Assembly: GCA_002269645.1 (NCBI GenBank)
Contig: NIVC01001760.1
Coordinates: 5,277 to 69,276 of the forward strand
Source: Macrostomum lignano
Taxonomy: Eukaryota
DNA length: 64,000 bases
Direction of reading: 5' to 3'
Made by a program: the position numbers and the translations under genes. Shown here one piece after another: positions 14,846 to 58,470 of the stretch (position 1 is its first letter; every line of letters begins with the position of its first letter). The notes under the pieces are model-generated. The model did no database searches and was not told the DNA's origin. It worked only from the letters and a program-made list of their open reading frames with translations.

Positions 14846-14894
14846 GTGAGAATTAGGGGAATCGAAGTGGATTAGTAGGATTAGGATTTGAATT

Positions 14895-15280: not shown

Positions 15281-15688
15281 GGAGTAAAAGAATTAGAAAA
15301 CAACTGAGTTTTCATAGTAATGCCCAGCAATGGCAGCATATTATATAGCAATCATAAATGATAATAAAGGCCAAATAATGTAGCTCTCAGTACAAAACTT
15401 AAATTTGAGCTGCAAAGCCCAGTGAGCCTTCATTCGTATTCCTTGTCGCAAGAGGAAGAGACACTGGCAATAAAACTCCCCACAATACTGGGCAGACTGG
15501 CTGCATCAGATAACGATGGGAAACGGTGGCCAGGTGATGCCCGGCCGAGATAAACTCAGCTGGGAGTCTTATTGGGGAACAATGGCAGTGGCATGGGAAA
15601 ACGGAGAATGCATTAGCAAATGTTACAAAACAGCTCTGGCAATATTTGATACATGCGCACAGAAATATTTTCTCAATTCAATTGGCAG

Positions 15689-17668: not shown

Positions 17669-18005
17669 GGTCCTCCTGCAATGATGACATTTAAACCCAA
17701 TCACTACCTATGCCTTGCGGACTAGCAACTGTGACCCTGACCTGACCCATCCTATGACATGTTTATTTTACAATACGATTGAGAACGCTTCTTGCCTAGC
17801 ATACTTTGTAATTTTAATACATTTAATGTTTTTTACGTGCTTTCCATGCGTTCCATTTTATGATTTTTTTGTGCTTTGGGGTTGTATCATTTTTTTCATT
17901 TTAGGTTATTTTAGGCTTTCTACCATAGACAACAGCGTGGAGGCATTAATACAAGTGCATATTAAAAATCAATTTATGACGACCGCCTTGTGAGCCCACT
18001 GCGAA

Positions 18006-22868: not shown

Positions 22869-22972
22869 GGCTACAAAAACACAGAGACAACCGAAGCAAA
22901 CAACACACAAATAAACTAGGCAACACACACAACCCTAAACACACGGCAGGACAGCAGGGGAGAGGACCGCTG

Positions 22973-23688: not shown

Positions 23689-24044
23689 ATAGCAATCATA
23701 AATGATAATAAAGGCCAAATAGTGTAGCTCTCAGTACAAAACTTAAATTTGAGCTGCAAAGCCCAGTGAGCCTTCATTCGTAAATCGTAGTTCCTTGTCG
23801 CAAGAGGAAGAGACACTGGCAATAAAACTCCCCACAATACCTGGGCAGACTGGCTGCATCAGATAACGATGGGAAACGGTGGCCAGGTGATGCCCGGCCG
23901 AGATAAAACTCAGCTGGGAGTCTTATTGGGGAACAATGGCAGTGGCATGGGAAAAACGGAGAATGCATTAGCAAATGTTACAAAACAGCTCTGGCAATAT
24001 TTGATACATGCGCACAGAAATATTTTCTCAATTCAACTTGGCAG

Positions 24045-25729
24045 AATCTTCGGCCGAGTCGCACCAGTCTCCGGCAAAAAAGACAAAGCAACACCACCAC
24101 CAGCAGCACCAGCAGCCGGCGTTGCCATTCTCCATCGAGAGGCTGACTGGCGACCCGGAGCTCGCGTCGGCAATGCAGCGGCAGTCGGCTGCGCTCTCCT
24201 TTCCCAGGCCGCCGCCTCCGCCGCACCTGCCGCACCTGCCGCACCTGCCGCCGCCGCCACCGCCGAAAGCCGGCCTGCACTGGCCGTACAACTCGGAGCT
24301 GCACAGCCAGCAGCACTCGCCAATGTTCGCCGCAGCCTCGGCGGCCGAGCAGCGCTGCCGAGAGTTCGGCCACCCGCCCGTCCTGCCGCCGCCTGTGCCG
24401 CCGATTCCGCCGGCGCACTTCAACGACCAAGCGGCCGCGGCGGCGGCGGCGGCAGCGGCGGCGGCATCACTGTTTCCCTGCGGCCGGCCGCCCATCCTGC
24501 CGCTGCCGCTGCTCACCCAGCTGTACGCCAGCAGCATGGGCCTCCTCAACCTGCCGCTGTGGCCGCAACCGCCGCCGCCGCCGTCTCATTCAGTGGCGCC
24601 ACCGCTGCCGGCTGTTCCATCGGCTTCGCCGAGGTCAAGCCAGCAGGCGCCGCACCAGCTGCCGCCGCCGCCGTCGATGCCGCCGCAGCCTCTGCCGGCA
24701 CATAACAGCGGTCAGCATCGCCGCGCCGCTGCCATGGCGAGCCCGACTGGCCCCGCGGCCGCAGCGGCGTTGGCGGCGGCGGCTGCTGCTGCAGCCTCCA
24801 CTTCATCTGGAGCTTCGCTGTCTCAGCCTCCGCTGATTGCAGCACCCGCAGCAGCGGCGCCGGCGGCCGCTGTCGAGTCCCCGTCGAGCGGTCGACCTCG
24901 GCACAATCGGCGTCGCGACGCTGGCGCCTCGCCGTCGAACGCGAGCAGCGAGGACGCACCGGCTGGCGGAGGCGGCGGCCGCGGGAGCCACGCGCTGCCG
25001 TACCCGCTGCGCAAGAAGGACGGCAAGATGCACTACGAGTGCAACGTCTGCCTCAAGAGCTTCGGCCAGCTGTCCAACCTGAAGGTGCACCTGCGGACGC
25101 ACACGGGCGAGCGGCCGTTCAAATGCGACCTGTGCGACAAAGGCTTCACCCAGCTGGCGCACCTGCAGAAGCACAACCTGGTGCACACCGGGGAGAAGCC
25201 GCACGCCTGCTACGTCTGCCACAAGCGGTTCAGCAGCACCAGCAACCTGAAGACGCACATGCGGCTGCACAGCGGCGAAAAGCCGTTCAGCTGCAAACTG
25301 TGCCCAGCCAAGTTCACCCAGTTTGTGCACCTCAAGCTGCACAAGCGGCTGCACACCAACGAGCGACCGTTCGAGTGCCCGAAGTGCTGCAAAAAGTACA
25401 TCAGCGCCAGCGGCCTGAAAACGCATTGGCGCTCCGGTCCCTGCTTTGGCAGCGAGTTGGCCACGGATTTGAATTCCATTCTGAACTCGATTGTCACGGA
25501 CAGCAGCCTGGACAGCAGGGACAGCATCGAGTTCCGCTGCGAGGAACAGTACACCGAGGATGAGGCGGCTGCGGCGGCGGAGGCTGCGGCGGACGAAGTC
25601 GAAGACGATGAGGAGGCCGAAGCGGATGCTGATGAGGCCTACGTTGAGGTTGAGGAAGTTGAGGATTCTGCGGCAGGCGATGAAGCTGACTCGGTGATGG
25701 AGCAGCGGTTGGAAACTGCGAACGCTTGA
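24045..25729 (+). CDS. PRDM1: PRDM1/Blimp-1 last exon: Pro/Ala-rich region and five C2H2 zinc fingers
   Basis: Acceptor TTGGCAG|24045, phase 1; [34 protein letters not shown]...[10 protein letters not shown]...[10 protein letters not shown]...[17 protein letters not shown] is the diagnostic Blimp-1 finger array; TGA at 25727-25729. Confidence 0.96.
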
Positions 25730-44380: not shown

Positions 44381-45189
44381 CTCAATTCATGTGGATTCTT
44401 CATCTGGCCTTAGAGATAGAAACGTTTGCCAATCCTTGGCCTAAAAGTTTAATGCAGCCACTTTCATAACGCCTAGAATTCAGCATTTTTGATGAAAATC
44501 TCTTTTCGGCGATGCAAAGTCCCTGGCTGGCAACAAAGACCCCGGAGCAGGAAGGAAACCATCTGGGTTATTGAAAACACGGACACGGTCTGCAAGGCTA
44601 CATTGAGACGGTTACAAACCGAGCTCTACTCGGGTCAGCAGGTGCGCGGGTCAAGTGAGGCGGCGGAAGGCCTTCCCGGTCCGCGTGCCGCCAGCCACTC
44701 GGCTGCTCTTCTTTGAGACCGATTTACCGATTTTCTGTTTTTGACTTTTGGCTTCCCCGCTTCTTCCGCCTCGTTTCCGCGGCCCAATTTGTCCGACCGG
44801 CTGCGGCCTTGGCAACCAAAAGGGAGCCCAGCTCAGACTCAGAGCTCCGATCCCTAAGGGATTGCGGGCCGCCGTTTATAATTCGCTATTTTAAACAGTC
44901 AATATGCTAATTTGGCACCTGGAGTCCCGCTTTTTAAAAGAAGTCAAATGCTTCTTTAAGAGATAACTTCTATGGGGGTTGAACGCAGATTAATTGGGAA
45001 TCCGTGGAAGATATGCAAAAAAGACTTGACAACTGGCCTGGAATCTTCCCGGGCATCATCCTGCACCCTGGTATCTAGCGGAACTTGACGTCACAATTTA
45101 TCAATTTGCTTTTTTCTCACCCATCCTGTCTCAATGCTTTTTCCTTCTGCCCATCCTCTTGTTTCATATCTTTCTCCCATTTTATCCAC

Positions 45190-45790
45190 CTCTCTACCTT
45201 TCTCTACACCTCTCTACCTCTCTCTACACCGCTCTACCTTTCTCTACACCCCTTTACCCTTCTCTACACCTCACTACCTTTCTCTACACCCCTCTCCGTT
45301 TCTCTACACCTCTCTACCTTTCTCTACACCCCTCTCCATTTCTCTACACCTCTCTACCTTTCTCTACACCCCTCTCCGTTTCTCTACACCTCTCTACCTC
45401 TCTCTACACCTCTCTACCTTTCTCTACACCTCTCTACCTCTCTCTACACCTCTCTACCTTTCTCTACACCTCTCTACCTCTCTCTACACCTCTCTACCTC
45501 CCTCTACACCTCTCTACCTTTCTCTACACCTCTCTACCTCTCTCTACCTCTCTCTACACCTCTCTACCTTTCTCTACACCTCTCTACCTCTCTCTACACC
45601 TCTCTACCTTTCTCTACACCTCTCTACCTCTCTCTACACCGCTCTACCTCTCTCTACACCTCTCTACCTTTCTCTACACCTCTCTACCTTTCTCTACACC
45701 TCTCTACCTCTCTCTACACCGCTCTACCTTTCTCTACACCCCTTTACCCTTCTCTACACCTCACTACCTTTCTCTACACCTCTCTCCGTT
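45190..45790. repeat. 20-bp minisatellite (CTCTACCTTTCTCTACACCT)n
   Basis: Tandem variant units. Confidence 0.92.
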
Positions 45791-46427
45791 TCTTGTTCAC
45801 TTGCAATAATTACACAAACCTAGTTTGCAAGTTAATAACTGAACAAAGTTATTTAAACTGAATTATATATTTTTTTCGATCCAGTCATTAGGCCTTACAG
45901 CTAGCTAGTCTAAACACTGAATTGGAAGAGACAGACTGTAAGTGAATGGAAGGAGACACAGAGAGAGATGATATACTTGCAGTTTTGGCTCCACCCCTGG
46001 GGGCAAACTTTGGCCAGACTACTTGAAAACAAACTTGCACAGTCCCGGGGCCGATCACTGAGCTGGTGCTTCAGCTCCTTGCGGTCTTGCACAACTGCAG
46101 TAGTATAAGTAGTAGTATATAGTTGAATATATCGCTGTTACTTAGCACCGGTTCCTTCCTGCATGTAGGCTAACTGCCGCCTTAAACCCCTGAGGCGAAT
46201 TCCCTGTGAGCAGGGCTGCAGAGTAAAGGGATGAGAACAGCTGAGGATGCATTGTTCCCTTCGATCCCACTATTTCCGGTTCTCCCAAAGACGCGCTTTC
46301 CCGAACCTGGGTAGAGAATTAAAAATTAAGGCCTTAGATATTTTCTCTGTTTTAAACTTTAAATACTTACTCTTCTCAGTTGCAGAGCCTGGTTCCTTTT
46401 TAGCCTGTTTGACTTGCGTTTTATGCG

Positions 46428-47078
46428 GGCTACCAGGGGTGACAGGAGTAACAGGGGTGACAGGAGTACCAGGGGTGACAGGGCTACCAGGGGTGACAGG
46501 AGTACCAGGGGTGACAGGGCTACCAGGGGTGACAGGAGTAACAGGGGTGACAGGAGTACCAGGGGTGACAGGAGTACCAGGGGTGACAGGAGTACCAGGG
46601 GTGACAGGGCTACCAGGGGTGACAGGAGTACCAGGGGTGACAGGGCTACCAGGGGTGACAGGGCTACCAGGGGTGACAGGAGTACCAGGGGTGACAGGAG
46701 TACCAGGGGTGACAGGAGTACCAGGGGTGACAGGGCTACCAGGGGTGACAGGAGTACCAGGGGTGACAGGGCTACCAGGGGTGACAGGGCTACCAGGGGT
46801 GACAGGAGTAACAGGGGTGACAGGAGTACCAGGGGTGACAGGAGTACCAGGGGTGACAGGAGTACCAGGGGTGACAGGGCTACCAGGGGTGACAGGGCTA
46901 CCAGGGGTGACAGGAGTACCAGGGGTGACAGGGCTACCAGGGGTGACAGGAGTACCAGGGGTGACAGGGCTACCAGGGGTGACAGGAGTAACAGGGGTGA
47001 CAGGAGTACCAGGGGTGACAGGAGTACCAGGGGTGACAGGAGTACCAGGGGTGACAGGGCTACCAGGGGTGACAGGAG
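46428..47078. repeat. 18-bp minisatellite (GGAGTACCAGGGGTGACA)n, left part, interrupted by E2
   Basis: About 36 units; continues at 55734. Confidence 0.96.
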
Positions 47079-47911
47079 TGTCATGAATGTGTTATTATGA
47101 CTGTGTGTACTTTGCTACTTTGCTACGCCGGGCCAGTCGGCCGTCCTCTCCCCCCTCCTTAGATATTTTCTGACTCACCCACCTGCACTTCTGCGCGTGC
47201 GTACCCCTCCCCTCCCTGCCTAGACCTTTTCTGTTGAGTCAAACCCCCCCCATGCTCTGCGTGCGACCCCCCCCTGTGCGACCCCGCCCCATTATTTTGT
47301 TAGCTTTGCTGCCCCGCCCCTGTTTGTGATTGGCTGCCAGTCCCAGTCTGCCGTGCTGCGCCCCGGCGATTGGCTGGTACAGCTCATGCGTTGCCTTGGC
47401 TGATGTCTAAGCCCCCTTTTCTGCCTTTATCCCGCGCCCTCGACCCCCAGTTTGCTGCCTATTTATTCGGCCCCCTTGAGACCCCATTCTCGTCGTCTTC
47501 GTGGCTCCTCGGCGATTGTGCCAGCGTTGGTTGCTGAATTGCTATTCCTCGCAGAATTGCTAGACAAATATATAAGTAAAGAATATCGAGATCACCACTG
47601 CTCTGACGGCGCTGTTTCTTGTACGACTGAAATCGCGGCTGGTAAGCCTTCCAATTTGTACGTCATTTGGGTCTGCATCTGTACTAGGCACCTTAGAGGG
47701 ATTAAGTGCGTCGTACGCCGGTCCCACCCCAAGCAGCTCTGCGTCGTACGCGAGTCTGTAGGCTGTCGTGCGTCGTACGCTCGAGCAGCCTAGTCCCGAC
47801 GGACACCGCGTCGTACGCGTGTCAGTGGAGGACCGCAGCCAGGGTCAGTACACGAACCCGGGTCTGGGAAAGGGGCACGAAAGGACCGAGCCCTTGAGCC
47901 CCATCATCACA
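47079..47911 (+). repeat. E2 5' LTR (833 bp)
   Basis: Matches 54898-55733 by eye except two poly-C lengths; two ATTGG (CCAAT) boxes, GC boxes, TATTTAT ~47460, donor-like G|GTAAGC (GT 47642-47643). Confidence 0.97.
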
Positions 47912-47914
47912 AAT

Positions 47915-47932
47915 TGGCATCCTTGGTGGGAC
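47915..47932 (+). promoter_or_regulatory. E2 primer-binding site (cognate tRNA not identified with certainty, possibly Arg)
   Basis: TGGCATCCTTGGTGGGAC 3 nt after the LTR; reads as the complement of CCA, discriminator G, acceptor stem and T-stem CCCAC. Confidence 0.75.
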
Positions 47933-48019
47933 CCTGCGCTGTGGAAGACTAAGCAAGGAAGAAAGCTCGAGGCGCGGAATATTGTGAGAAATTAAGGTTA
48001 GAAACTGTGACGCCGTGGT

Positions 48020-49096
48020 ATGGATGCTGGAGGTGCTGCTGGAGGTGCTGCTGGAGGTGCGGCTGGAGGTGCGGCTGGAGGTGCGGCTGGAGGTGCGGCT
48101 GGAGGTGCTGCTGGAGGTGCTGCTGGAGCCTTTGGTGTTAATGATCTGGTCGCCGCCTTGACTGCCCAGATTCAGCAGAACATGCAGCAAGCGGGTGCCC
48201 TCAGGATTCAGAGGCCGGTGAAGTATGCTCCAGGAATGAATTTCGTGAAGTGGTTGAGGCTCTTCGTAGCTTATTGCGATGCCATGCAGATTCCGATGCA
48301 GAATCGGCGCGCTCAGTTGCTCAGCAACCTAGACTTCAGCACCTTCCAAGTTGTTGACAACATGAACCTTGGGGACGACTTGCAGTTCGAAGAATTTACC
48401 CAGGCCTTGAGGGATAGGTTCACTATGCACCGTACCGTCGTCGACTACCGCACAGAACTGAGCAATAGAGAGCAGAGTGAGAAGGAGTCGGTAGAAGATT
48501 TCTCTGAAGCTGTGATTGAGTTGGTCGCAAACGCCTTTCCTGATGCGCCTGCCGATGTGCGCGATGATCTTGCGAAAGAGCGATTTATGCGAGGCGTCCG
48601 TGCGGGGGTGGCTGTGCGGGAGCGACTGTACATGAGCCAGCCGGAGACGTTAGCGGACGCAATGCGTCTGGTGCATCAGCTGGAAGCGGCGGTTAGGGCA
48701 AGTCATGGTCCACCAGGTCAGGTATCGAAAAGAACCGTTTGTGCTGTTACGACCGAGACCAGAAAGGAGGCTTCCGAAAGCAGTGAGGTCGAGATGCTTC
48801 GAAAACAGCTGGCGGCCATGGAGATGCGAATGAAAGAGATGGAGGAGCGGAGGTCTGAAGAAGCGGCAGAGCCGACCCCGGCGAGTCGGAAGGCTGTGCA
48901 GTGTTTTTCGTGTCGAGAGTGGGGCCATATCTCATCAAAGTGTCCGAAGAAGACCAGTCAGAAGAGTGAAAACGGGAAATCGCCAGTACGATGTCACAAG
49001 TGCAACGGTGAAGGCCACCTATCCTTCAAGTGTCCGAAGTCGGGAAACGGGCCGAGGGGACCGACCGGGGAGAGTCGGGACCCTGCCAGGAAGTGA
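48020..49096 (+). CDS. E2 gag (358 aa)
   Basis: ATG 48020; capsid-like FVKWLRLFVAY..; knuckles CFSCREWGHISSKC and CHKCNGEGHLSFKC; homologous to E1 gag. Confidence 0.95.
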   Translation: MDAGGAAGGAAGGAAGGAAGGAAGGAAGGAAGGAAGAFGVNDLVAALTAQIQQNMQQAGALRIQRPVKYAPGMNFVKWLRLFVAYCDAMQIPMQNRRAQLLSNLDFSTFQVVDNMNLGDDLQFEEFTQALRDRFTMHRTVVDYRTELSNREQSEKESVEDFSEAVIELVANAFPDAPADVRDDLAKERFMRGVRAGVAVRERLYMSQPETLADAMRLVHQLEAAVRASHGPPGQVSKRTVCAVTTETRKEASESSEVEMLRKQLAAMEMRMKEMEERRSEEAAEPTPASRKAVQCFSCREWGHISSKCPKKTSQKSENGKSPVRCHKCNGEGHLSFKCPKSGNGPRGPTGESRDPARK

Positions 49097-52000
49097 AGTC
49101 TCCCAGGAGCGAGGAACCGGGGTTGCTCACTAACTCTGTAAATAAATCCAAGTGCGTCTCTGGTGATGGGAATTCAAAGAGCAACCTGGTTCATGAGGCG
49201 TGTTCGTCGGTATCAACGGAGCCTCTGACAGTTTTTATTTCCGGTGCGGTTTCCGGCAAGCCAGTGGCTCTGCTGTTAGACAGTGGTGCGAGTGTGTCAG
49301 TGCTGAGCTGTGATGTTTTCCTGAGGCTGCCGCAAGAGGTGAGGGAGAGACTGACTGCAATGGACGGTTCCCTTTCAACGGCCAATGGAGGTGCGATGAG
49401 GATGAGAGGCTGCATTGTGCTGGACGTGGAGATTGGCGGCGAGCGGTGGTCAGCGAATTTCTTCGTAGTGGACGGATTACGTTATGATGTCATTCTCGGG
49501 TCCGAATTTTTCAAACAGCATCGTTGCGTCATCAACTATTCAGAGTTTGTCTTTCGAGTGGGCGATGTTAGAGTTCCGATACGGCAGAAAGGCGAGCTGC
49601 CCGTGGTGTGTCGAATCAAAGCCGAGACAACGGTATTTCTGGAACCGGCGCAAGAAGTGATCATGCCAGCCAGGGTAGAGAAAAAGGGCGCAAGAAACTG
49701 CGGATCGGTCGGCATAACGGAAGAAAAGCCGGTGAAGGCCGCTGAGAAGGATTTGGCGCTGGCTCGAGCTCTGGTAGCGCCCGGCGTGGATGGACGGCTG
49801 CCGATGAGATTGCTGAATACGTCCAGTTGTAGGAAGAGGGTCAAGAAAGGAGAGACGATTGGCTGGTTTATTCCTTTGGAACCGAACGGAGGTATCAACG
49901 TGGTGCGCTTGGACGACGACGTAGAGGCCAAGAATGAAGCGGAGGCATGGGACCCGATCGAAGAATTCCGCGAGTGGGGTTCGTGTGGCCTGTCGGAGGA
50001 GGAGGAAGCCGACTTCAGGGAGCTGATTTCCCAACATCGGGCTGTCTTTGCTAAGGACTCCAAGGATCTCGGCGGTACGACGGTGATGAAGCACGAGATC
50101 GACACTGGAGATGCCAGGCCTGTGAAAGAGGCGGCGAGGCGGATTCCCCCTTACCTGCGGCAGGAAGTGGACAAGGAGTTGGATGACTTGCTGGAAGCTG
50201 GGAGAATCAGCGAGGTTCAGTCCCCATGGTGCTCTCCGGTGGTGTGCGTGAAAAAGAAGGACGGTTCCCTGAGGTTCTGTTGTGACTACCGGAAACTGAA
50301 TGAAGTGACCAAGAAGGATGCAGTGCCGTTGCCCAGGACAGATGACCTGTTGGAGAGCCTAGGCGGTGCCAAGATTTTTTCGACCATGGACATGCAGTCG
50401 GGATACTGGCAGATGGCGGTGGAACCCAGCGACAGACTGAAGACGGCCTTTGGCGTTTCACACCGGGTACAGCAGTACGCCTGGAACGTTATGCCATTTG
50501 GATTGACAAATGCACCGGCTTCATTCAGCCGGCTAATGAATGTGGTGTTGGGGAAGTTGTGCTGGAAGACGTGTTTGGTGTATCTGGACGACCTGCTAGT
50601 GTGGTCACGAACGGTAGAAGAGCACCTGGAACGGTTGCAAACGGTTTTTCGACGGTTGCGAGCAGCGAACATCAAACTGAAGCCGAAGAAGTGCGCATTC
50701 CTGCTGAAGTCAGTGACCTTCCTGGGACACGTAGTGTCAGCTGATGGGATCGCCACGAGTCCAGAAAAGATTGCCGAAATTCGTGACTGGCCAACTCCGA
50801 GGAATGTGAAGGAAGTAAGGTCATTCCTGGGACTGTGCGGGTATTACCGGCAATTCATCGCAGATTTTTCCCGCATTGCTGAGCCGATGCTGCGACGGAC
50901 CCGACATGATTGCCCGTGGAGCTGGGATGAGGAGTGTCAAGCCGCATTCGAGGCCCTGAAGGAAAGGTTGCAGGGATCTGAGGTCATGGCGTTTCCAAAC
51001 TTTGCGGAGGACGCTGGAGAATTCGTTTTAGACACAGACGGTAGCACAAAAGAAGGAATTGGCGCTGTGCTTTCGCAGGTGCAGAAAGATGGGAGTGAGA
51101 AGGTAATAGCTTACGGAAGCAGGACGTTGTCGCGAGAAGAACGGAATTACTGCACGACACGAGTCGAGTTGCTGGCCGTGGTGTTTTTCGTACAGAAGTT
51201 TCGTTATTACCTGATGGGGCGAGAGTTTCTAGTGCGCACCGATCACAGCAGCTTGAAGTGGCTGCATTCGCTGCGGGACGTAGAAGGACAACTGGCCAGA
51301 TGGCTGGAACTCTTGGCTCCGTACAGGTATCGCATCGAACATCGTCCGGGAGTGAAACATCAACACGCGGACGCTCTCTCCAGGAAGCCACGTCGGCGCC
51401 ATCAAGGAAGCGAGAGTTGTCCTGGATGTGCACAAGAGCAGATCGGCGTGAACGCGTTGGGATTGCAGAAGTGGACCTCGGAGGAGATCAGAGAGAGCCA
51501 GAAGATGGACAGCGACATTCGTCAGGCGATGGAGCTGCTGGCTCACAGCGACGGAGAGATAACCGAAGAGCATTTGCGGCGCATATCACCGACGGCAAGG
51601 AGGATTGTCGAAAGACGTCGTGACCTTGAGGTGTCGGACAGTGAGGTGTTGCTGTGTCATACGGCCAGTAGACGTCAGCCGCAAGTGGTGTTGCCACGGA
51701 ATATGCTGAGAGCGGTGCTGGAAGAAGCTCATGGTGGACGGAGTGGAGGGCACGTTGGGATTTTCAAGACCAAGGAGAAGGTGCGGCAATCGTTTTGGTG
51801 GCCGGGACTTGGCCGCGAGGTCGAAGAGCACGTAAAAGCCTGTTTGGACTGCACCAAGGCCAAAGCTGGCAAGAAACCAATTGCACCGATGGAGCCGATT
51901 CCGAGTTCAAGCCCATTCGATATCGTGATGACGGACGTCATCGGGCCGCTGCCACGGAGCAAGAAAGGAAACTTCTACATCCTCACGGTGCAAGATGCGT

Positions 52001-53238
52001 TCTCAAAGTGGCCTGACGCTTATGCCATCCGGAACCAGAAGTCGGCAACGATCGCAAGGGTGCTATTCGAACGCTGGATTGCCAATCACGGGTGCCCCCG
52101 GGTACTTCACTCAGACCAAGGAAGGAACTTTGAGTCGGGGATCGTCAGGAAGCTGTGCGAGCTGTTGGGTGTGAAGAAGACCAGGACGAGCGCCTACCAC
52201 CCGAGTGGCAACGGACAGGTGGAACGATTTAACGGGTTCCTGAAGAACAGTTTGCGCACGTATCTGGTACAGAAGGGTCAGAACGCCTGGGAGGAGTACC
52301 TGCCAAGTGCCTTGATGGCTTATCGATCGACGGTCCAGGCGTCCACCGGTTACACGCCCTACTACATGCTGCATGGTCAGGAGATGCCGCTGGGATTCGA
52401 ACCAGAGGACCTTAGGCGAAAGACGGACAGCTATCCCTTGTTTGTGCAAGAGATCCAGCAGAACCTGCTTCATGCCCATGAACGCATTCGAGAAGGACGC
52501 GAGACGGTTCAGCGACGGCAGAAAATGAATTACGATCGGAAAGTAAAGGGCAAAGCGATTCAGAAGGGCGACTCTGTCTTGCTGTACTATCCGTGCTTGG
52601 AGATGGGAGAGAAAAGCAAGTTCCATATCAACTGGCGCGGCCCAGTGAAGGTCCTGGAGAAGCTGTCAGATGCGTTGTACCGAGTGCAGGATCCGACACA
52701 GCCGCAGAAGACCAAGGTGGTGCACTTCAACAATCTCCGGCCGGTTCAGGGCCAGACGGAGGCGGCAGACGGTCAAGAGACTAGAGAGGAAATTGGGAGG
52801 GCCAGTTCGGGAAAAACCAGGCCGCGACGTGATAATTCCACTGCTGGACGAAGCCGAAGGCAGAGAGTGCAACGGGGCGAGACCCAGAGGTGGACCGCAG
52901 CGCGAGGGCCGCAGGACCAGGAATCCGAGCAGGAAGATGAAGAGTTTGAAGATCTTCAGCTGCGGTTTCAAGATCCAAGAGATCACGCTCCACCGGACAC
53001 CCGAAATCTGGCCGAAGACTGTGAGCCCGGACCTGAGCGTCGAGAAGCAGACGATGACGAAGAAGAGCACGACGATGAGTCGCGGTACGACGAGGAGCAG
53101 GACGAAGAGGATGAGGCAGAGCCGAACGACGCCAACGTACCCGAGCAGGAAGTGAGGACGGCACAGGAGGAAGCAGGGCGACCAAGACGTCTGCGGCGAC
53201 CGCCAGATCGGTTTGGGGTCCCGGTGTACTACTACTGA
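49030..53238 (+). CDS. E2 pol (PR-RT-RH-INT), -1 frame relative to gag
   Basis: LLDSGAS protease; RT YLDD; RH LDTDGS/TRVELLAVV/TDH; INT HHCC, DVIGP, SDQG, ERFN and NWRGP; uninterrupted 1402-codon ORF. Confidence 0.98.
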   Translation: MSEVGKRAEGTDRGESGPCQEVKSPRSEEPGLLTNSVNKSKCVSGDGNSKSNLVHEACSSVSTEPLTVFISGAVSGKPVALLLDSGASVSVLSCDVFLRLPQEVRERLTAMDGSLSTANGGAMRMRGCIVLDVEIGGERWSANFFVVDGLRYDVILGSEFFKQHRCVINYSEFVFRVGDVRVPIRQKGELPVVCRIKAETTVFLEPAQEVIMPARVEKKGARNCGSVGITEEKPVKAAEKDLALARALVAPGVDGRLPMRLLNTSSCRKRVKKGETIGWFIPLEPNGGINVVRLDDDVEAKNEAEAWDPIEEFREWGSCGLSEEEEADFRELISQHRAVFAKDSKDLGGTTVMKHEIDTGDARPVKEAARRIPPYLRQEVDKELDDLLEAGRISEVQSPWCSPVVCVKKKDGSLRFCCDYRKLNEVTKKDAVPLPRTDDLLESLGGAKIFSTMDMQSGYWQMAVEPSDRLKTAFGVSHRVQQYAWNVMPFGLTNAPASFSRLMNVVLGKLCWKTCLVYLDDLLVWSRTVEEHLERLQTVFRRLRAANIKLKPKKCAFLLKSVTFLGHVVSADGIATSPEKIAEIRDWPTPRNVKEVRSFLGLCGYYRQFIADFSRIAEPMLRRTRHDCPWSWDEECQAAFEALKERLQGSEVMAFPNFAEDAGEFVLDTDGSTKEGIGAVLSQVQKDGSEKVIAYGSRTLSREERNYCTTRVELLAVVFFVQKFRYYLMGREFLVRTDHSSLKWLHSLRDVEGQLARWLELLAPYRYRIEHRPGVKHQHADALSRKPRRRHQGSESCPGCAQEQIGVNALGLQKWTSEEIRESQKMDSDIRQAMELLAHSDGEITEEHLRRISPTARRIVERRRDLEVSDSEVLLCHTASRRQPQVVLPRNMLRAVLEEAHGGRSGGHVGIFKTKEKVRQSFWWPGLGREVEEHVKACLDCTKAKAGKKPIAPMEPIPSSSPFDIVMTDVIGPLPRSKKGNFYILTVQDAFSKWPDAYAIRNQKSATIARVLFERWIANHGCPRVLHSDQGRNFESGIVRKLCELLGVKKTRTSAYHPSGNGQVERFNGFLKNSLRTYLVQKGQNAWEEYLPSALMAYRSTVQASTGYTPYYMLHGQEMPLGFEPEDLRRKTDSYPLFVQEIQQNLLHAHERIREGRETVQRRQKMNYDRKVKGKAIQKGDSVLLYYPCLEMGEKSKFHINWRGPVKVLEKLSDALYRVQDPTQPQKTKVVHFNNLRPVQGQTEAADGQETREEIGRASSGKTRPRRDNSTAGRSRRQRVQRGETQRWTAARGPQDQESEQEDEEFEDLQLRFQDPRDHAPPDTRNLAEDCEPGPERREADDDEEEHDDESRYDEEQDEEDEAEPNDANVPEQEVRTAQEEAGRPRRLRRPPDRFGVPVYYY
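49042..49048 (+). promoter_or_regulatory. Putative -1 ribosomal frameshift heptamer G GGA AAC
   Basis: X XXY YYZ in gag frame at the start of the gag/pol overlap, followed by a possible hairpin (CCGAC..GTCGG); same heptamer in E1 at 21942-21936 (-). Confidence 0.75.
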
Positions 53239-53337
53239 AGAAGGGTCCGGTGTACGGCGCTTGGATAGCCAAAGGGGAAGGGAGGTACATGTCGTGCGTG
53301 TCTCATTGCTCATCGGAGTTAGGCCGGACTGTTACAG

Positions 53338-54323
53338 ATGGCGGACCTCTACGAGTGTCTTGGAGTGCAGCTGTGGGCGTCTGCGGCACAGATTCGGAAA
53401 GCGTTCTACGGTCGAGCACGCGAACTGCACCCTGACAAGAGCGCAACAGAGGAGACGCGAAGAGATTCCAGGAGTGCGAAGAGGCGTACCGAATACTGTC
53501 GTGTCCGTTCCTTAGAAAGCTGTACGATATCTTTGGAAATGCTGTTCGTGACCGGGATGAGATGCTTCGGCTCGCAGAAGGGATGTTAGAGGATGAAGAC
53601 ATGCCCGACGATCTCCGAGAAGAGATAGAAAGACTACAAGAGAGCGACCGATTAGCTGAGGAGGCGTACGAGAGAGAACAGGCGAGGAGGGATGAGGAGC
53701 ACGTCAAGATGGAGGCAAGTGAGGAGGCCTCAGACGATGAGCAGGACGAAGAGATGAACGAGGCGAGTGAGACACTGCCGGAGGAGTACGAGGTCGAGAA
53801 GGTCTTAGGAGTACGAGTCACGGAGCGAGGAGCGGAGTATCTGCTGCAGTGGGCCGGTGTAGAGGAGCTTGAGACGTCATGGGAAGCGGAGGAAGATTGT
53901 GCCGGATGTAGAAACCTGATTGAAGAATATCTGCAGAGAGCGTACCGGCTTCAGACAAGACCGTGCCGACCAGTGACCGTCGCGGAACTGGAGAACGTAG
54001 GACCCAGTCGGAAGAAACTGCACCAGGCAATGCGGAAGGGCGACCCGTGGGGCATCTTTGAGGTGCTGCTAGCCCTGAAGGGGAAGTGCGCCACTGCCTT
54101 GGTGGATTTCAAGGAATTCGGTCCGGAGTTGATGCTGCAAATCCTGGGCTACTTGGAGCGAGACGGTCGCAAGTATCCGGGGCACGGAGTTCGTCGGTGG
54201 AGTCGCCAAGCGTGTCAAGCTGTCTACATGTCGGTGATGGTGGTGTTCCCGCTGTTCGACCTGCGACGCCAGGGTTTGGTCCTGGGTGCCCTCCGTAGGC
54301 TGTGGGATTCGTGCTCTGACTGA
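53338..54323 (+). CDS. E2 ORF3: J-domain (HPD), acidic linker, chromodomain and uncharacterised helical domain; ~328 aa if a 1-nt deletion near 53457 is corrected
   Basis: MADLYECLGVQLWASAAQIRKAFYGRARELHPDKSATEET[A]KRFQECEEAYRILSCPFLRKLYDIFG; EEYEVEKVLGVRVTERGAEYLLQWAGVEELETSWEAEEDCAGCRNLIEEYL (53781-53937); joins track ORFs 53338-53589 and 53562-54323. Confidence 0.88.
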
Positions 54324-54885
54324 GGCTATGTCTTCCTAGGGACTTTGGGGCTAGGGACTTTGCAGTGCAGACCCAGGGACAGCGGAGCGGAGGTGGACCG
54401 GCCTTAACGGGTGCTGACGGAGCGACGCGGCTGTGCAGCAACCGCAGGACTCGACGACCAGCGCAGAGCGACCAGAGCAACCGGCGACAGTAGCGACAGG
54501 GAGACGAGGCACCAGAGCGACGGCCGTACTCGGCGGGATGCAGGGAAGCAGTGCTAGTATTACTTGTGAGGGTAAATGTTTGACGGTTTCATTTTTTTGT
54601 TTTTTGTGAACATTTAGCGTTTTTTTCGAACTTCAGCGTTTTTGTTAAAGTGAGTTTTTCCCAAAATTTGCGTATTGCTTCCCAATGATGCGTACTCACT
54701 ATCCTATGTTTGAAGGTTTCTTCGTCATTTTTAAACGGTATAATCACTGCGGTTTTGTTTTTTGTTCGAACTAGTTGCCATGCGAGTCCAAAATATTTTT
54801 CAAATGCGGTTTGTTCCTCTGTTCAATTTTTTTGTTATAGTAGCATCATTTCAATATTCGACTTTTCGAACTCGAACTTTTGTCT

Positions 54886-54897
54886 AGGGGACGGGAG
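54886..54897 (+). promoter_or_regulatory. E2 polypurine tract
   Basis: AGGGGACGGGAG immediately before the 3' LTR. Confidence 0.85.
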
Positions 54898-55733
54898 TGT
54901 CATGAATGTGTTATTATGACTGTGTGTACTTTGCTACTTTGCTACGCCGGGCCAGTCGGCCGTCCTCTCCCCCCTCCTTAGATATTTTCTGACTCACCCA
55001 CCTGCACTTCTGCGCGTGCGTACCCCTCCCCTCCCTGCCTAGACCTTTTCTGTTGAGTCAAACCCCCCCCCCATGCTCTGCGTGCGACCCCCCCCCTGTG
55101 CGACCCCGCCCCATTATTTTGTTAGCTTTGCTGCCCCGCCCCTGTTTGTGATTGGCTGCCAGTCCCAGTCTGCCGTGCTGCGCCCCGGCGATTGGCTGGT
55201 ACAGCTCATGCGTTGCCTTGGCTGATGTCTAAGCCCCCTTTTCTGCCTTTATCCCGCGCCCTCGACCCCCAGTTTGCTGCCTATTTATTCGGCCCCCTTG
55301 AGACCCCATTCTCGTCGTCTTCGTGGCTCCTCGGCGATTGTGCCAGCGTTGGTTGCTGAATTGCTATTCCTCGCAGAATTGCTAGACAAATATATAAGTA
55401 AAGAATATCGAGATCACCACTGCTCTGACGGCGCTGTTTCTTGTACGACTGAAATCGCGGCTGGTAAGCCTTCCAATTTGTACGTCATTTGGGTCTGCAT
55501 CTGTACTAGGCACCTTAGAGGGATTAAGTGCGTCGTACGCCGGTCCCACCCCAAGCAGCTCTGCGTCGTACGCGAGTCTGTAGGCTGTCGTGCGTCGTAC
55601 GCTCGAGCAGCCTAGTCCCGACGGACACCGCGTCGTACGCGTGTCAGTGGAGGACCGCAGCCAGGGTCAGTACACGAACCCGGGTCTGGGAAAGGGGCAC
55701 GAAAGGACCGAGCCCTTGAGCCCCATCATCACA
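54898..55733 (+). repeat. E2 3' LTR (836 bp)
   Basis: Copy of 47079-47911. Confidence 0.97.
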
Positions 55734-55855
55734 GGAGTACCAGGGGTGACAGGGCTACCAGGGGTGACAGGAGTACCAGGGGTGACAGGAGTAACAGGGG
55801 TGACAGGAGTACCAGGGGTGACAGGAGTACCAGGGATGACAGGGCTACCAGAGGT
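55734..55855. repeat. 18-bp minisatellite, right part
   Basis: Same unit as 46428-47078, resuming in phase after the TSD. Confidence 0.95.
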
Positions 55856-56429
55856 GTCAATGGCGTCGGGACTGTCGGATCAAAAAAAGGAAGAAATCCC
55901 AATTAAACTCGATCTTTGAAAGCTGACTCCACTACTGTCTCAATTGTACTGTGCCGACTGGGCCATGGTAGCGAAAGGTGACGCCCTCTGGGCTCTATTG
56001 GTCGTGCAACTTCATGTTTACACTTAAAGACAATGCTAATATTCAAACGCGCCGCCTCTGCCGCCTCCGTCGCCGCCACCGAGTCGCCGCGAAGAAACAG
56101 GGAAAAAAGAAACTTAAAAAAAGAGACTTTGAGTGAAAACGATCTATACTGAACCAATTTGACACCTTCCAAGTCTTCAGTTGCGCAAAGGTTTTTGTCT
56201 TGTCGAAACGCACTCGGTTAACACCTCACTGCTGACCAGTTCTGTGTGCAATGTGTATGCAAATTGATCATTAGAAGTGGATTGAGTATCAGAAGTAGCG
56301 AGAGCATGCAAGGTGATGATTGCAAGCACGACATGTCGGAGCCATGATTTTTTATTGAAGCAGTCGCGAGCGCTATAGGAGAGGGGAAGAGTGGGGTGCC
56401 AGCAGAAGATGTCAGACAAGGTACCGTAA

Positions 56430-56885
56430 AGGAGGCACCAGCAAGGATGTCAGAGGGGGCACCAGCTAGCATGTCAGAGGAGACACCAGCAAGGATGTCA
56501 GAGGAGGCACCAGCAAGGATGTCAGAGGAGGCACCAGCTAGGATCTCAGAGGAGGCGCTAGCTAGGATGTCAGAGGAGGCGCTAGCTAGGATCTCAGAGG
56601 GAGCGCTAGCTAGAATGTCAGAGGGAGCGCTAGCTAGGATGTCAGAGGAGGCACCAGCTAGCATGTCAGAGGGAGCGCTAGCTAGGATGTCAGAGGAGGC
56701 ACCAGCTAGGATGTCAGAGGGAGCGCTAGCTAGGATGTCAGAGGAGGCACCAGCTAGCATGTCAGAGGGAGCGCTAGCTAGGATGTCAGAGGGAGCGCTA
56801 GCTAGGATGTCAGAGGGAGCGCTAGCTAGCATGTCAGAGGAGGCGCTAGCTAGGATGTCAGAGGAGGCGCCAGCTAGCATGTCAG
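56430..56885. repeat. 24-bp minisatellite (GCTAGGATGTCAGAGGAGGCACCA-type)
   Basis: About 19 variant units. Confidence 0.92.
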
Positions 56886-57989
56886 AGAAATCTCCATTAG
56901 AGACGGCCACTGCGTCAAAGCATCGAGTCCGATTGCTAACTGTTTTGCCTGCTATTTTCAAGCAGAAATTCAAAGCAACAACAGTCAAAAGAGAGGCAGC
57001 CGCCCCGCATCAATAAAACATTGATTAGCTTAGCTTAGCATCTGAGAAGACTCAACAAACAGAATAATTCTTGTCCCTACTAGTTTTTGCGCGGCTCTTT
57101 TTTGAGGAGAAGCGGGCCGCGGAGACAGCGCGCAGCAGTTCCCGTCGGCGTCGCAGTGGGGGAAAGCGGGCGGGCGGTGGGAGCGGCTGCCACATGCGCC
57201 CCCCCCGCTCCCCCAATGAGACTCGCCCCGCGCAGCAATGCAGGCAGGCAAAGCAGGAAAAAAGTGAAGACTGAAGGAGAGATTTTGAAAGAAATTTTCC
57301 AGACTTCTCTGGAGAGAATTATTTCTTGAGCAGTTTTCTCTCTCCTAATATTAGTCATTTCCCGCCAATTCTCATTTTCGTGGCTTTCGCGATTGCTTAG
57401 AAGAGCTGCCTGCAGCACTCAGTCTTCCCTTCTCAAGCTGGGGAAAGAAATAAAAACTGTTGAGTTAATTTCTTTCAGCAACACACATCCCAGATCCCCA
57501 CCTGCAATTTCCTGCGCCCCGTGGCAGTGGCAACAGAGTAATGCAGGCTGCTGCAGCGCTCTCTCAGCTCAGGCTATCAAAATTCTCGCAATCCCGAAAA
57601 CCGGGAAAAGCAATGAAAAACACTAGCGGAGTGCAGCGATGGTGTTTGGGGAGATTTTTCCCCAAATTGGCAATTCTCCCAGGGCTCTCCTATAGCCCTG
57701 CCAGAGCACTCAGCTGTCAGGCAGCCGCAGTTCTGCCCACAGATCAAAGAGGAGTTAAAAAACCCGGCAGAATGCATCCAATTAACCTGCTCCCTCTTAT
57801 ACCACAAAATGCCCATGCCGCATATTTGACAAGCGGGGCAATGCAGTCTACACTGTTTGAGTCTAATTGCATGGAAAGACTGTGGAGGGTGCCAAAAACG
57901 AATGAAATATTTCCCAATTAAGCTGTGAAGCAGTTATTTTGCAGAGGAGTAACTGCTAAATAACCTGCATAAACTCATCAAGGCTCAGC

Positions 57990-58470
57990 TTCTACTAACA
58001 GCTTCACAGGCTCTACCAACAGCTTCACAGGCTCTACCAACAGATTTACAGGCTTTACCAACAGATTTACAGGCTCTACCAACAGCTTTACAGGCTTTAC
58101 CAACAGCTTTACAGGCTCTACCAACAGCTTTACAGGCTTTACCAACAGCTTTACAGGCTTTACCAACAGATTTACAGGCTCTACCAACAGCTTTACAGGC
58201 TTTACCAACAGCTTTACAGGCTCTACCAACAGCTTTACAGGCTTTACCAACAGCTTTACAGGCTTTACCAACAGATTTACAGGCTTTACCAACAGATTTA
58301 CAGGCTTTACCAACAGATTTACAGGCTTTACCGACAGATTTACAGGCTTTACCGACAGATTTACAGGCTTTACCAACAGATTCACAGGCTCTACCAAAAG
58401 CTTCACAGGCTCTACCAACAGCTTTACAGGCTCTACCAACAGATTCACAGGCTCTACCAACAGCTTCACA
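57990..58470. repeat. 21-bp minisatellite (ACAGGCTTTACCAACAGCTTT)n
   Basis: About 22 variant units. Confidence 0.93.

What the first reader, a model, noticed from the sequence alone, without database searches (positions are those of the whole stretch)
53338..54323. Ty3/Gypsy retrotransposon with a third ORF encoding a J-domain (Hsp40) + chromodomain protein instead of env
Seen: inside an intact, young element, between the pol stop (53238) and the PPT, two overlapping ORFs join into one ~328-aa protein if one G is added near 53457 (ACG-[G]CG). It has a full J-domain with HPD (DLYECLGV..ASAAQIRKAF..LHPDK..AKRFQECEEAYRILS.PFLRKLYDIFG), a very acidic linker, an HP1/Polycomb-type chromodomain and a helical C-terminal domain. 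No signal peptide or TM segment is evident, so it is not env. Established: J-domains recruit and activate Hsp70 via HPD; polyomavirus T antigens use one to dismantle Rb-E2F complexes. Chromodomains read methyl-lysine. In chromoviruses the chromodomain is fused to the integrase C-terminus, not placed in a separate ORF with a J-domain. I do not know of this architecture in LTR elements. Inference: an element-encoded factor that brings Hsp70 to methylated chromatin, either as an anti-silencing protein (conceptually like VANC of VANDAL transposons) or to aid particle assembly or integration targeting. The chromodomain keeps two of three aromatic-cage positions (Y of EEY, W of QWAG; the third is V).
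Basis: partly seen in the sequence, partly recalled or inferred. Interest (0 to 1): 0.93.

Follow-up and report, generated by a model that had tools for sequence, protein, structure and literature searches.

The report
Retrotransposon-encoded Hsp40-like chromodomain protein
A young flatworm (Macrostomum lignano) Ty3/gypsy retrotransposon carries, where other elements carry env, a conserved third gene for a J-domain (Hsp70 co-chaperone) protein that in this lineage also has an HP1-like chromodomain; I found no description of such an accessory gene in retroelements.

Summary
Window 47079-55733 is a full-length Ty3/gypsy element of Macrostomum lignano with near-identical LTRs, a 4-bp target duplication and open gag and pol. 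Between pol and the polypurine tract lies ORF3 (53338-54323). It has a complete J domain with HPD, an acidic linker, an HP1-type chromodomain with 2 of 3 cage aromatics, and a basic five-helix C-terminal domain. It has no signal peptide or membrane segment. ORF3 has one frameshift in this copy. Two other independent insertions encode the intact 328-aa protein. It is not a one-off capture. A 74%-identical homologue gives dN/dS 0.18. Related gag-pol elements also carry a J-domain ORF3 with the same C-terminal domain just after pol, but without the chromodomain. These are a metagenome contig, a Logan contig and a second element in this window. A further M. lignano gene model joins integrase pieces to a J domain. 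The J domain plus C-terminal domain is therefore the conserved core, and the chromodomain is a lineage-specific insertion. A splice-acceptor motif lies at or within 7 nt of the start codon in every lineage, which suggests a spliced or SL trans-spliced subgenomic mRNA. Function is inferred: Hsp70 recruitment for the element's own complexes, chromatin-tethered in this lineage. No published description was found.

The parts
47075..47078 (+). 5' target-site duplication (GGAG)
   Evidence: The same 4 nt follow the 3' LTR at 55734-55737.
47079..47911 (+). 5' LTR (TG..CA)
   Evidence: Local alignment to the 3' LTR shows 1 substitution and small indels.
47915..47932 (+). Putative primer-binding site (starts TGG, 3 nt after the LTR)
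   Evidence: Read from the sequence. No tRNA gene in the window to match it against. Low confidence.
47984..47988 (+). Donor-like GTGAG in the leader, between the PBS and the gag ATG
   Evidence: L003 has an analogous GTGAG just after its PBS-like site. It matches the M. lignano cis-donor motif GT[G/A]AG (PMC8629364). Weak on its own.
48020..49096 (+). gag (358 aa, two CCHC knuckles; a 12-nt tandem repeat near its 5' end)
49030..53238 (+). pol (PR-RT-RNaseH-INT with H2C2, rve and p58_C domains; long acidic C-terminal tail; -1 frame relative to gag; no chromodomain)
53332..53337 (+). Acceptor-like TTACAG abutting the ORF3 ATG, 99 nt after the pol stop
   Evidence: It matches the SL trans-splice acceptor motif [T/C]TNCAG and the ~100-nt operon spacing of M. 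lignano (PMC8629364). YTNYAG lies 0-7 nt upstream of the ORF3 ATG in all five lineages.
53338..54323 (+). ORF3, J-domain/chromodomain protein gene. Broken in this copy by one frameshift and no stops. Intact copies encode 328 aa.
53344..53528 (+). J domain (PF00226, residues 3-64 of the intact protein; HPD present)
53541..53780 (+). Post-J helix and acidic linker (33 D+E in 80 residues)
53787..53939 (+). HP1-type chromodomain (PF00385; 2 of 3 cage aromatics)
53946..54320 (+). C-terminal domain: basic (pI 9.9) five-helix bundle, specific to this ORF3 family
54886..54897 (+). Polypurine tract (AGGGGACGGGAG), preceded by a T-rich stretch at about 54580-54880
54898..55733 (+). 3' LTR
55734..55737 (+). 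3' target-site duplication (GGAG)

Best explanation
ORF3 is a genuine accessory gene of a clade of Ty3/gypsy LTR retrotransposons found in Macrostomum lignano and in related environmental and Logan sequences. It encodes a soluble, acidic class-C J-domain protein. The parts are an N-terminal J domain with HPD, a conserved post-J helix, an acidic linker, and a basic five-helix C-terminal domain known only from this family. SHOWN: the domains; the gene's position between pol and the PPT inside LTR-bounded copies at three independent insertion sites; its presence after pol in divergent relatives; divergence in step with gag and pol; purifying selection. INFERRED: (1) The J domain docks on host Hsp70 and triggers its ATPase, as J domains with HPD do. 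(2) The C-terminal domain supplies the partner or client, most plausibly a component of the element's own nucleoprotein complex (Gag, or the very acidic integrase tail), so that Hsp70 helps assemble, remodel or uncoat it. (3) The protein is translated from a subgenomic mRNA. That mRNA would be made by splicing onto the acceptor that abuts its ATG, either by SL trans-splicing, which is common in this worm, or by cis-splicing from the leader donor. (4) In the window's lineage an HP1-like acidic patch plus chromodomain was inserted between linker and C-terminal domain. This would hold the co-chaperone, and whatever it binds, on methyl-lysine chromatin. It would be a trans-acting counterpart of the chromodomain that chromoviruses carry on their integrase, and would favour nuclear steps or integration in heterochromatin.
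For: Domains: DnaJ 59 bits and Chromo 48 bits on the intact protein. Nearest PDB relatives are the Ydj1 J domain and Swi6/HP1. Foldseek matches J domains with TM up to 0.8-0.9.
Three copies: the window, L001 (99.4% nt) and L085 (98.1% nt) have different 4-bp TSDs (GGAG, GCTT, CTTA) and all contain ORF3. Two further copies appear in M. lignano protein sets.
Selection: dN/dS is 0.18 against the 74%-identical homologue L002, and below 0.3 in every domain.
Synteny in relatives. L003 has gag, pol and then a 264-aa J-ORF3 82 nt after pol; its pol is 43% and its gag 39% identical to the window's. L084 has the INT C-terminus and then a 309-aa J-ORF3. In the window's second element, the only other family-HMM hits in all six frames of the window are the two ORF pieces directly after its pol. 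P0006 is an M. lignano gene model that joins integrase pieces and a J domain.
Congruent divergence: L003 and L084 are the closest pair both in INT (52.6%) and in ORF3 (39% over the full length).
Acceptor: YTNYAG ends 0-7 nt before the ATG in all five lineages; the chance estimate is 4e-7 for four independent lineages. The motif and the 99-nt spacing match M. lignano SL trans-splice sites (PMC8629364). ORF3s of LTR elements are typically expressed from spliced messages (PMC5408684).
Not env: no TM segment or signal peptide. The C-terminal domain is basic, whereas the pol tail is strongly acidic.
Against: There are no expression or protein data, so splicing is inferred from motifs only. YTNCAG occurs 15 times in the element against 14.7 expected, so only its position is informative.
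The chromodomain lacks the third cage aromatic (V here; L in L002), so methyl-lysine binding is uncertain.
The chromodomain is absent from three related lineages, so the chromatin role cannot be the core function.
The C-terminal domain has no detectable relative or structural match. Its partner is therefore a guess.
The second element's J-like domain scores below Pfam's cut-off and has lost HPD.
Insertion-site evidence for heterochromatin targeting is weak. Two of three copies lie in or beside tandem repeats, but the genome is repeat-rich.
The window's own copy is frameshifted.
Confidence: 0.55

Rival explanations
1. Anti-silencing factor. The chromodomain takes ORF3 to H3K9me- or H3K27me-marked copies of the element, and recruited Hsp70 dismantles HP1/Polycomb-type repressive complexes, reopening transcription.
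For: A mark-reader plus J-domain architecture is present. The acidic patch plus chromodomain resembles the N-terminal half of HP1 (alignment to Swi6) and could compete with HP1. A J-domain protein with HSP70 is known to act at chromatin marks in Arabidopsis (SILENZIO with MBD5/6; review PMC8616336), so Hsp70 action at marked chromatin has a precedent.
Against: In the Arabidopsis precedent the J-protein promotes silencing rather than relieving it. The conserved core of the family lacks any chromatin reader, so anti-silencing through a chromodomain cannot be the ancestral role. The aromatic cage is incomplete. No expression or chromatin data are available.
Confidence: 0.2
2. Purely cytoplasmic chaperone helper. 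ORF3 supplies a dedicated J-protein so that Hsp70 folds or activates Pol/RT or assembles Gag particles. The chromodomain of this lineage would be a neutral or degenerate add-on with no chromatin role.
For: The J domain plus C-terminal domain is the conserved core, and the chromodomain is lineage-specific with an incomplete cage. From established knowledge, hepadnaviral reverse transcriptase needs Hsp70/Hsp40 for activation, and several viruses depend on host J-proteins.
Against: The chromodomain is under purifying selection as strong as that on the J domain (dN/dS 0.12 against 0.13) and is kept at 74% protein divergence. A useless add-on would not be expected to show this.
Confidence: 0.15
3. 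Self-restraint or host mimicry. A reader-plus-J-domain protein analogous to the MBD5/6-SILENZIO module that promotes silencing. It would keep copy number tolerable, or it may be a host-derived repressor module carried along by the element.
For: There is an architectural analogy to a known silencing module (PMC8616336). The family has only modest copy numbers in the data seen here, at least five copies.
Against: An element gene that silences its carrier is hard to maintain under the strong purifying selection seen. The relatives lack the reader domain. There is no direct evidence.
Confidence: 0.05
4. Passenger or artefact. ORF3 would be a one-off captured host gene fragment, a neighbouring host gene, an env remnant, or an assembly artefact with no role for the element.
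For: The window copy is frameshifted. The proteins are annotated only as 'hypothetical' or 'J domain-containing protein'. A J-plus-chromodomain protein also exists in a cellular-looking gene context elsewhere (P0100/L086).
Against: ORF3 lies inside the LTRs and TSDs at three independent insertion sites. It is present after pol in elements whose pol is only 43-47% identical. dN/dS is 0.18. It has no TM segment or signal peptide. P0100 lacks the family's C-terminal domain.
Confidence: 0.03

Closest known systems
Chromoviruses (chromodomain-bearing Ty3/gypsy elements)
   Same: A Ty3/gypsy element that carries an HP1-like chromodomain. That domain is known to be able to direct integration to heterochromatin (established knowledge; distribution reviewed in PMC2864245 and PMC13524379).
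   Different: In chromoviruses the chromodomain is fused to the integrase C-terminus. Here pol has no chromodomain, and the domain sits in a separate ORF3 between a J domain and a novel C-terminal domain. Sister elements of the clade lack it altogether.
Non-env ORF3s of LTR retrotransposons (e.g. the GDSL esterase, DEDDy exonuclease, coiled-coil and TM ORF3s of bdelloid Juno/Vesta/TelKA; PMC5408684)
   Same: A family-specific third ORF downstream of pol. It was acquired by modular capture, is not a fusion glycoprotein, and is expected to be expressed from a spliced message.
   Different: None of the described ORF3 types is a J-domain co-chaperone or contains a chromodomain. This ORF3 co-diverges with gag and pol across lineages whose pol is about 43-47% identical.
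J domains of polyomavirus T antigens
   Same: A parasite-encoded N-terminal J domain with HPD that borrows host Hsc70 for the parasite's purposes (established knowledge).
   Different: The genetic element is unrelated (a DNA virus). The J domain there is fused to Rb-binding and helicase modules. No LxCxE motif is seen by eye in the protein read. There is no homology beyond the J fold.
Arabidopsis SILENZIO with MBD5/MBD6 (a J-domain protein recruited to a repressive chromatin mark, acting with HSP70)
   Same: The same logic: a reader of a heterochromatin mark combined with a J domain and Hsp70 (PMC8616336).
   Different: It is a host system. Reader and J-protein are separate polypeptides, the mark is methyl-CpG rather than methyl-lysine, and the outcome is silencing. 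There is no sequence relationship beyond the J domain.
Class C (type III) cellular J-domain proteins
   Same: A J domain with HPD and no G/F region, zinc-finger domain or DnaJ C-terminal domain; specificity comes from an unrelated partner-binding domain.
   Different: This one is encoded by a mobile element, and its partner-binding C-terminal domain has no detectable cellular homologue.

Membership tests
J-domain protein (Hsp40/DnaJ superfamily, PF00226) | J-domain sequence and fold (four helices) | tested here: met
   PF00226 scores 59.1 bits (cut-off 27.8) over profile positions 1-63/63 on the intact copy. phmmer to the Ydj1 J domain gives 1e-10. Foldseek target TM is 0.8-0.9 to solved J domains.
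J-domain protein (Hsp40/DnaJ superfamily, PF00226) | HPD tripeptide between helices II and III | tested here: met
   HPD is invariant in P0001, P0002, P0032 and P0034 (alignment) and present in P0006. It is not kept in the second element's copy.
J-domain protein (Hsp40/DnaJ superfamily, PF00226) | Stimulation of Hsp70 ATPase | not testable with these tools
   Biochemical property; inferred only.
Class C J-domain proteins | No G/F region, zinc-finger domain or DnaJ C-terminal domain | tested here: met
   Pfam finds only DnaJ and Chromo in P0001 and P0002, and only DnaJ in P0032 and P0034.
HP1/Polycomb-type chromodomain (PF00385) | Chromodomain sequence signature | tested here: met
   PF00385 scores 47.7-49.2 bits (cut-off 25.1) over the full profile. 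Best PDB matches are Swi6, CBX5, CBX1 and HP1.
HP1/Polycomb-type chromodomain (PF00385) | Complete three-residue aromatic cage | tested here: not met
   Alignment to Swi6 shows Y and W kept, with the third position V (L in P0002).
HP1/Polycomb-type chromodomain (PF00385) | Binding of methylated histone lysine | not testable with these tools
   The AF2 model of this region was unreliable (pLDDT about 30).
Ty3/gypsy (Metaviridae) LTR retrotransposon | LTRs with TG..CA, a short TSD, a PPT, gag with CCHC, and pol in the order PR-RT-RH-INT | tested here: met
Chromovirus clade of Ty3/gypsy | Chromodomain at the integrase C-terminus | tested here: not met
   No Chromo hit in the 1402-aa pol at E <= 1.
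Chromovirus clade of Ty3/gypsy | Placement within the chromovirus clade in an RT/INT phylogeny | not tested
   No reference set (GyDB, Repbase, Dfam) is available in these tools.
Errantivirus-like, env-bearing Ty3/gypsy | ORF3 encodes a membrane fusion glycoprotein (signal peptide, TM anchor) | tested here: not met
   Maximum KD(19) is 1.35 and the N-terminus is not hydrophobic. The protein is acidic and soluble-looking, and its Pfam content is DnaJ plus Chromo.
J-ORF3 family defined here (J domain + linker + five-helix C-terminal domain, downstream of pol) | Colinear J domain and family-specific C-terminal domain, with the gene located between pol and the PPT | tested here: met
   Alignments A1 and A2; synteny in L003, L084 and the window's second element; window copy.

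The most novel reading that the evidence does not exclude
A retroelement lineage has evolved its own chromatin-targeted Hsp70 recruiter. In this reading the chromodomain-J protein is an anti-silencing or heterochromatin-entry factor that uses the host chaperone to remodel HP1/Polycomb-type chromatin at or around the element. That would be the first transposon-encoded chaperone-based counter-defence in animals. The chromodomain-less J-ORF3s would represent an older, general 'bring your own Hsp40' strategy of a whole Ty3/gypsy clade.
Probability: 0.18. Interest if true: 0.9.

Novelty: new variant of a known kind. Interest (0 to 1): 0.68.

Why it matters
Retroviruses and retrotransposons are known to depend on host Hsp70/Hsp40, but I found no report of one that encodes its own J-protein. 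A conserved, selected J-domain gene that travels with a gag-pol clade shows that chaperone recruitment can be important enough to be built into a retroelement genome. It also offers a natural system in which the client of that recruitment can be looked for.

The lineage-specific insertion of an HP1-like chromodomain into a separate accessory protein, rather than onto the integrase, is a second and independent way for Ty3/gypsy elements to acquire a chromatin reader. It allows a clean comparison with chromodomain-less sister families in the same genome.

The acceptor motif at the start codon suggests that a retroelement may exploit the host's spliced-leader trans-splicing to make a subgenomic mRNA. 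That would be of interest in its own right.

Practically, these genes are annotated in M. lignano as ordinary 'J domain-containing' host proteins and should be flagged as transposon genes.

Tried and rejected
1. Metagenome-contig scan with the family alignment. The back-translated patterns were generic J-domain motifs, and all 80 loci were ordinary DnaJ-type J-domain matches. It was uninformative and used the only scan.

2. A third protein-database search with the C-terminal-domain alignment returned nothing, not even the query's own protein. I treat it as uninformative rather than as proof of absence.

3. The viral-contig scan, the PDB profile search and Foldseek of the C-terminal-domain model found no relative. 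The best Foldseek hits were generic or designed helical bundles at E >= 0.05.

4. The full-length AF2 model modelled the chromodomain poorly, at pLDDT about 30. I did not use it for cage geometry.

5. Twenty further J-domain hits from the representative search were read and are ordinary or repetitive J-proteins, not family members. P0003-P0005 are multi-J or multi-chromodomain repeat proteins.

6. P0100 (J domain plus chromodomain, 263 aa) was considered as a possible host donor or relative. It lies among cellular-looking genes and lacks the C-terminal domain, so it looks like an independent fusion or a gene-calling artefact.

7. The env reading was rejected, and so was chromovirus membership.

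8. The 1.27-kb direct repeats around the second element were tested as LTRs and rejected. They have no TG..CA ends and no PPT.

9. I asked whether ORF3 is preferentially preserved in decayed copies. L085 has 12 frameshifting indels in gag and pol and none in ORF3. By my arithmetic from the counts, that has about a 10% chance under a uniform rate, so it is not evidence.

10. Heterochromatin or tandem-repeat targeting judged from three insertion sites is inconclusive.

11. Literature searches for a J-domain or DnaJ ORF in LTR retrotransposons found none. Repbase, Dfam and GyDB could not be consulted.

12. The source organisms of L002 and L084 (Logan runs) could not be identified. L003 comes from a brackish microbial-mat metagenome co-assembly.
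Full report
WHAT IS THERE

The finding lies in a full-length LTR retrotransposon at window 47079-55733.
- The LTRs are 47079-47911 and 54898-55733. They begin TG and end CA, and differ by one substitution and a few small indels.
- The element is flanked by a GGAG target-site duplication and interrupts an 18-nt minisatellite.
- gag (48020-49096) has two CCHC knuckles.
- pol (49030-53238, -1 frame relative to gag) has protease, RT, RNase H and integrase domains and a long acidic tail, but no chromodomain.
- A polypurine tract (54886-54897) precedes the 3' LTR.

Protein searches identify the host as the flatworm Macrostomum lignano.

THE OBSERVATION

Between the pol stop and the PPT lies ORF3 (53338-54323).
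- Pfam finds a DnaJ domain, shared between two reading frames, and a Chromo domain (E 5e-13), both above the curated cut-offs.
- This copy therefore carries one frameshift and no premature stop.
- I used instead the natural intact paralogues returned by the database: P0001 (PAA78660.1) and P0207 (PAA83624.1), both 328 aa.
- On P0001 the J domain covers residues 3-64 (59 bits, whole profile) and the chromodomain covers 151-201 (48 bits).
- The nearest solved structures are the Ydj1 J domain and the Swi6/HP1/CBX5 chromodomains.
- HPD is present. The linker has 33 acidic residues in 80.
- The chromodomain keeps the Tyr and Trp of the cage but has Val at the third position.
- The last ~125 residues are basic (pI 9.9) and model as a five-helix bundle (pLDDT 78, pTM 0.70).
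- There is no membrane segment or signal-like N-terminus.

IS IT PART OF THE ELEMENT OR A ONE-OFF CAPTURE?

Three lines of evidence say it is part of the element.

First, two further full-length copies (L001, 99.4% identical; L085, 98.1%) sit at unrelated loci with different 4-bp duplications (GCTT, CTTA). These are independent insertions, and both contain ORF3 intact. Two more copies surface in M. lignano protein sets: an 80-aa fragment, and a 2698-aa gene model of an MSH6-like gene that has swallowed the element.

Break counts are as follows.

| Copy | gag | pol | ORF3 |
|---|---|---|---|
| window | open ORF | open ORF | 1 frameshift |
| L001 | 0 frameshifts | 2 frameshifts | 0 |
| L085 | 4 frameshifts | 8 frameshifts | 0 |

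There are no premature stops anywhere. A pattern of indels only fits long-read assembly error as well as it fits decay. The window's frameshift may therefore not be real.

Second, a 74%-identical homologue from an unrelated sequencing run (L002) gives dN/dS = 0.18 overall. By region the values are J domain 0.13, linker 0.30, chromodomain 0.12 and C-terminal domain 0.15.

Third, and most telling, divergent relatives of the gag-pol backbone carry a homologous ORF3 in the same place.
- L003 is a 7-kb contig from a brackish microbial-mat metagenome. It has gag (39% identical), pol (43%) and, 82 nt later, a 264-aa protein with the J domain, linker and the same C-terminal domain. The contig ends at a PPT and the first bases of an LTR.
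- L084 (another Logan run) has an integrase C-terminus (47%) followed by a 309-aa homologue.
- P0006, an M. lignano gene model, joins integrase pieces and a related J domain.
- The window itself holds a second element of the clade on the minus strand: gag 21807-22928 and pol 18006-21533, the latter 46% identical. When every six-frame ORF piece of the window is scanned with the family profile, the only hits besides the finding are the two pieces directly downstream of that pol. These are a J-like domain (17429-17704) and a C-terminal-domain match (within 16467-17435), and they are colinear.

Integrase and ORF3 identities rank the lineages the same way: L003 and L084 are the closest pair in both. 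ORF3 is thus an old, vertically co-inherited gene of this retroelement clade.

THE KEY CORRECTION

None of these relatives has a chromodomain. The conserved core is the J domain, post-J helix, linker and C-terminal domain. The acidic patch plus chromodomain resembles the N-terminal half of an HP1 protein. It was inserted in the lineage of the window's family and L002, and has since been kept under constraint.

HOW IT IS PROBABLY EXPRESSED

The ORF3 ATG lies 99 nt after the pol stop and is abutted by TTACAG. In all five lineages a YTNYAG motif ends 0-7 nt before the ORF3 ATG, although the upstream sequences are otherwise unalignable. From the motif's measured frequency, the chance of this is about 4e-7 for four independent lineages.

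In M. lignano, [T/C]TNCAG is the top motif at spliced-leader trans-splice acceptors, about 30% of genes are trans-spliced, and downstream genes of operons sit about 100 nt after the preceding gene (PMC8629364). A donor-like GTGAG also lies in the leader between the PBS and the gag ATG, both in the window and in L003. This is where retroviruses place the donor for env mRNA. ORF3s of LTR elements are generally expressed from spliced messages (PMC5408684).

I therefore infer a subgenomic mRNA made by trans- or cis-splicing. This is motif evidence only.

HOW IT MOST LIKELY WORKS

Shown: a complete J domain with HPD and without the G/F, zinc-finger or C-terminal domains of class A/B proteins. That makes it a class-C J-protein, whose specificity should lie in its other domains.

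Inferred:
- It recruits and activates host Hsp70 on a partner held by the family-specific, basic C-terminal domain.
- That partner is most plausibly part of the element's own complex (Gag, or the strikingly acidic integrase tail), so that Hsp70 helps assembly, remodelling or uncoating.
- In the window's lineage the chromodomain would tether this activity to methyl-lysine chromatin. It would be a trans-acting counterpart of the chromoviral integrase chromodomain.

I give this 0.55 overall. The 'genuine element-encoded J-protein' part is near certain, and the partner and chromatin steps are much less so.

Rivals:
- Anti-silencing factor (0.20).
- Purely cytoplasmic helper with an idle chromodomain (0.15). 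The constraint on the chromodomain argues against this.
- Self-restraint or silencing mimic, by analogy with Arabidopsis SILENZIO-MBD5/6, where a J-protein at a repressive mark promotes silencing (PMC8616336) (0.05).
- Passenger or artefact (0.03).

COMPARISON WITH WHAT IS KNOWN

- It is a Ty3/gypsy element by every structural criterion tested.
- It is not a chromovirus by the defining feature, because there is no chromodomain on the integrase.
- It is not env-bearing.
- Non-env ORF3s are known in LTR elements (GDSL esterase, DEDDy exonuclease and others in bdelloids; PMC5408684). Chromodomains in metazoan Ty3/gypsy elements are reported at the pol C-terminus (PMC13524379). Neither paper mentions a J-domain ORF.
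- Targeted literature searches found no J-domain ORF either.
- Virus-encoded J domains are known in polyomavirus T antigens (established knowledge), but they are unrelated in context.
- The proteins themselves are already in public databases, annotated automatically as 'hypothetical' or 'J domain-containing' host proteins.
- Repbase, Dfam and GyDB could not be consulted, so prior curation cannot be excluded.

VERDICT

- Novelty: a new variant of a known kind (an accessory ORF3 of an LTR retrotransposon) with an undescribed domain content.
- Interest: 0.68.
- The decisive functional test lies outside what this report may propose. Expression, census, insertion-distribution and structural data are the way forward.

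Noticed in passing
window 16467-22928 (minus strand): A second Ty3/gypsy element of the same clade (pol 46% identical). It has its own ORF3 homologue downstream of pol: a J-like domain (17429-17704; Pfam DnaJ 23 bits, below the cut-off; HPD not kept) and, in another frame, a C-terminal-domain match within 16467-17435. An acceptor-like TTGCAG lies 7 nt before its ATG. No LTRs were found for it.
   Followed up: yes
window 15345-16610 and 23689-24962: A 1.27-kb direct repeat (98.2% identical) brackets the second element. It lacks TG..CA ends and a PPT, so it is not an LTR. It overlaps the 5' part of an ORF that continues into C2H2 zinc fingers (24008-25729). An ORF at 14500-14856 looks like a PR/SET-type domain by eye, so the element may sit in a duplicated piece of a PRDM-like gene. 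Unexplained.
   Followed up: partly
window 46431-47079 and 55731-55856: The 18-nt minisatellite (unit TACCAGGGGTGACAGGAG; open in several frames, e.g. a GVTGVPG... repeat) is the insertion target of the element. The region carries many other tandem arrays (45187-45793, 56430-56887, 57988-58470).
   Followed up: partly
window 48025-48128; L001 4667-4793; L085 4721-4800: A 12-nt tandem repeat at the 5' end of gag (coding for an Ala/Gly repeat) varies in copy number between the three copies (8.7, 10.6 and 6.7 units).
   Followed up: no
L001 and L085 (M. lignano NIVC01000672.1 and NIVC01000412.1), and the window element: All gene breaks in the three copies are frameshifting indels (15 in total) and none is a premature stop. 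This suggests that many are long-read assembly errors rather than decay.
   Followed up: partly
L002 883-1134 (minus strand): The homologue from Logan run SRR24204725 loses similarity before the end of the C-terminal domain and runs into what looks, by eye, like a CCHC gag knuckle of another element in reverse orientation. This may be a nested insertion or a chimeric contig.
   Followed up: no
P0208 (UPI0007A16B00, 2698 aa): An older M. lignano gene model of an MSH6-like mismatch-repair gene includes gag, pol and ORF3 of this element as exons. The predictor spliced the pol C-terminus directly onto the ORF3 start, so it used the same acceptor-like site.
   Followed up: no
L086 794-1585 (ENA metagenome contig): P0100 is a 263-aa protein with a canonical J domain and a complete-cage HP1-like chromodomain. 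It lies among cellular-looking genes (NUP50, complex I 49 kDa). It is an independent J-plus-chromodomain combination without the retroelement family's C-terminal domain.
   Followed up: partly
L003 815-850 and 6900-7008: The metagenome relative has a clear PBS-like site (TGGCGCCCGAACAGGGAC) followed at once by GTGAG. Like the window element (about 54580-54880), it also has a T-rich tract just before the PPT.
   Followed up: no
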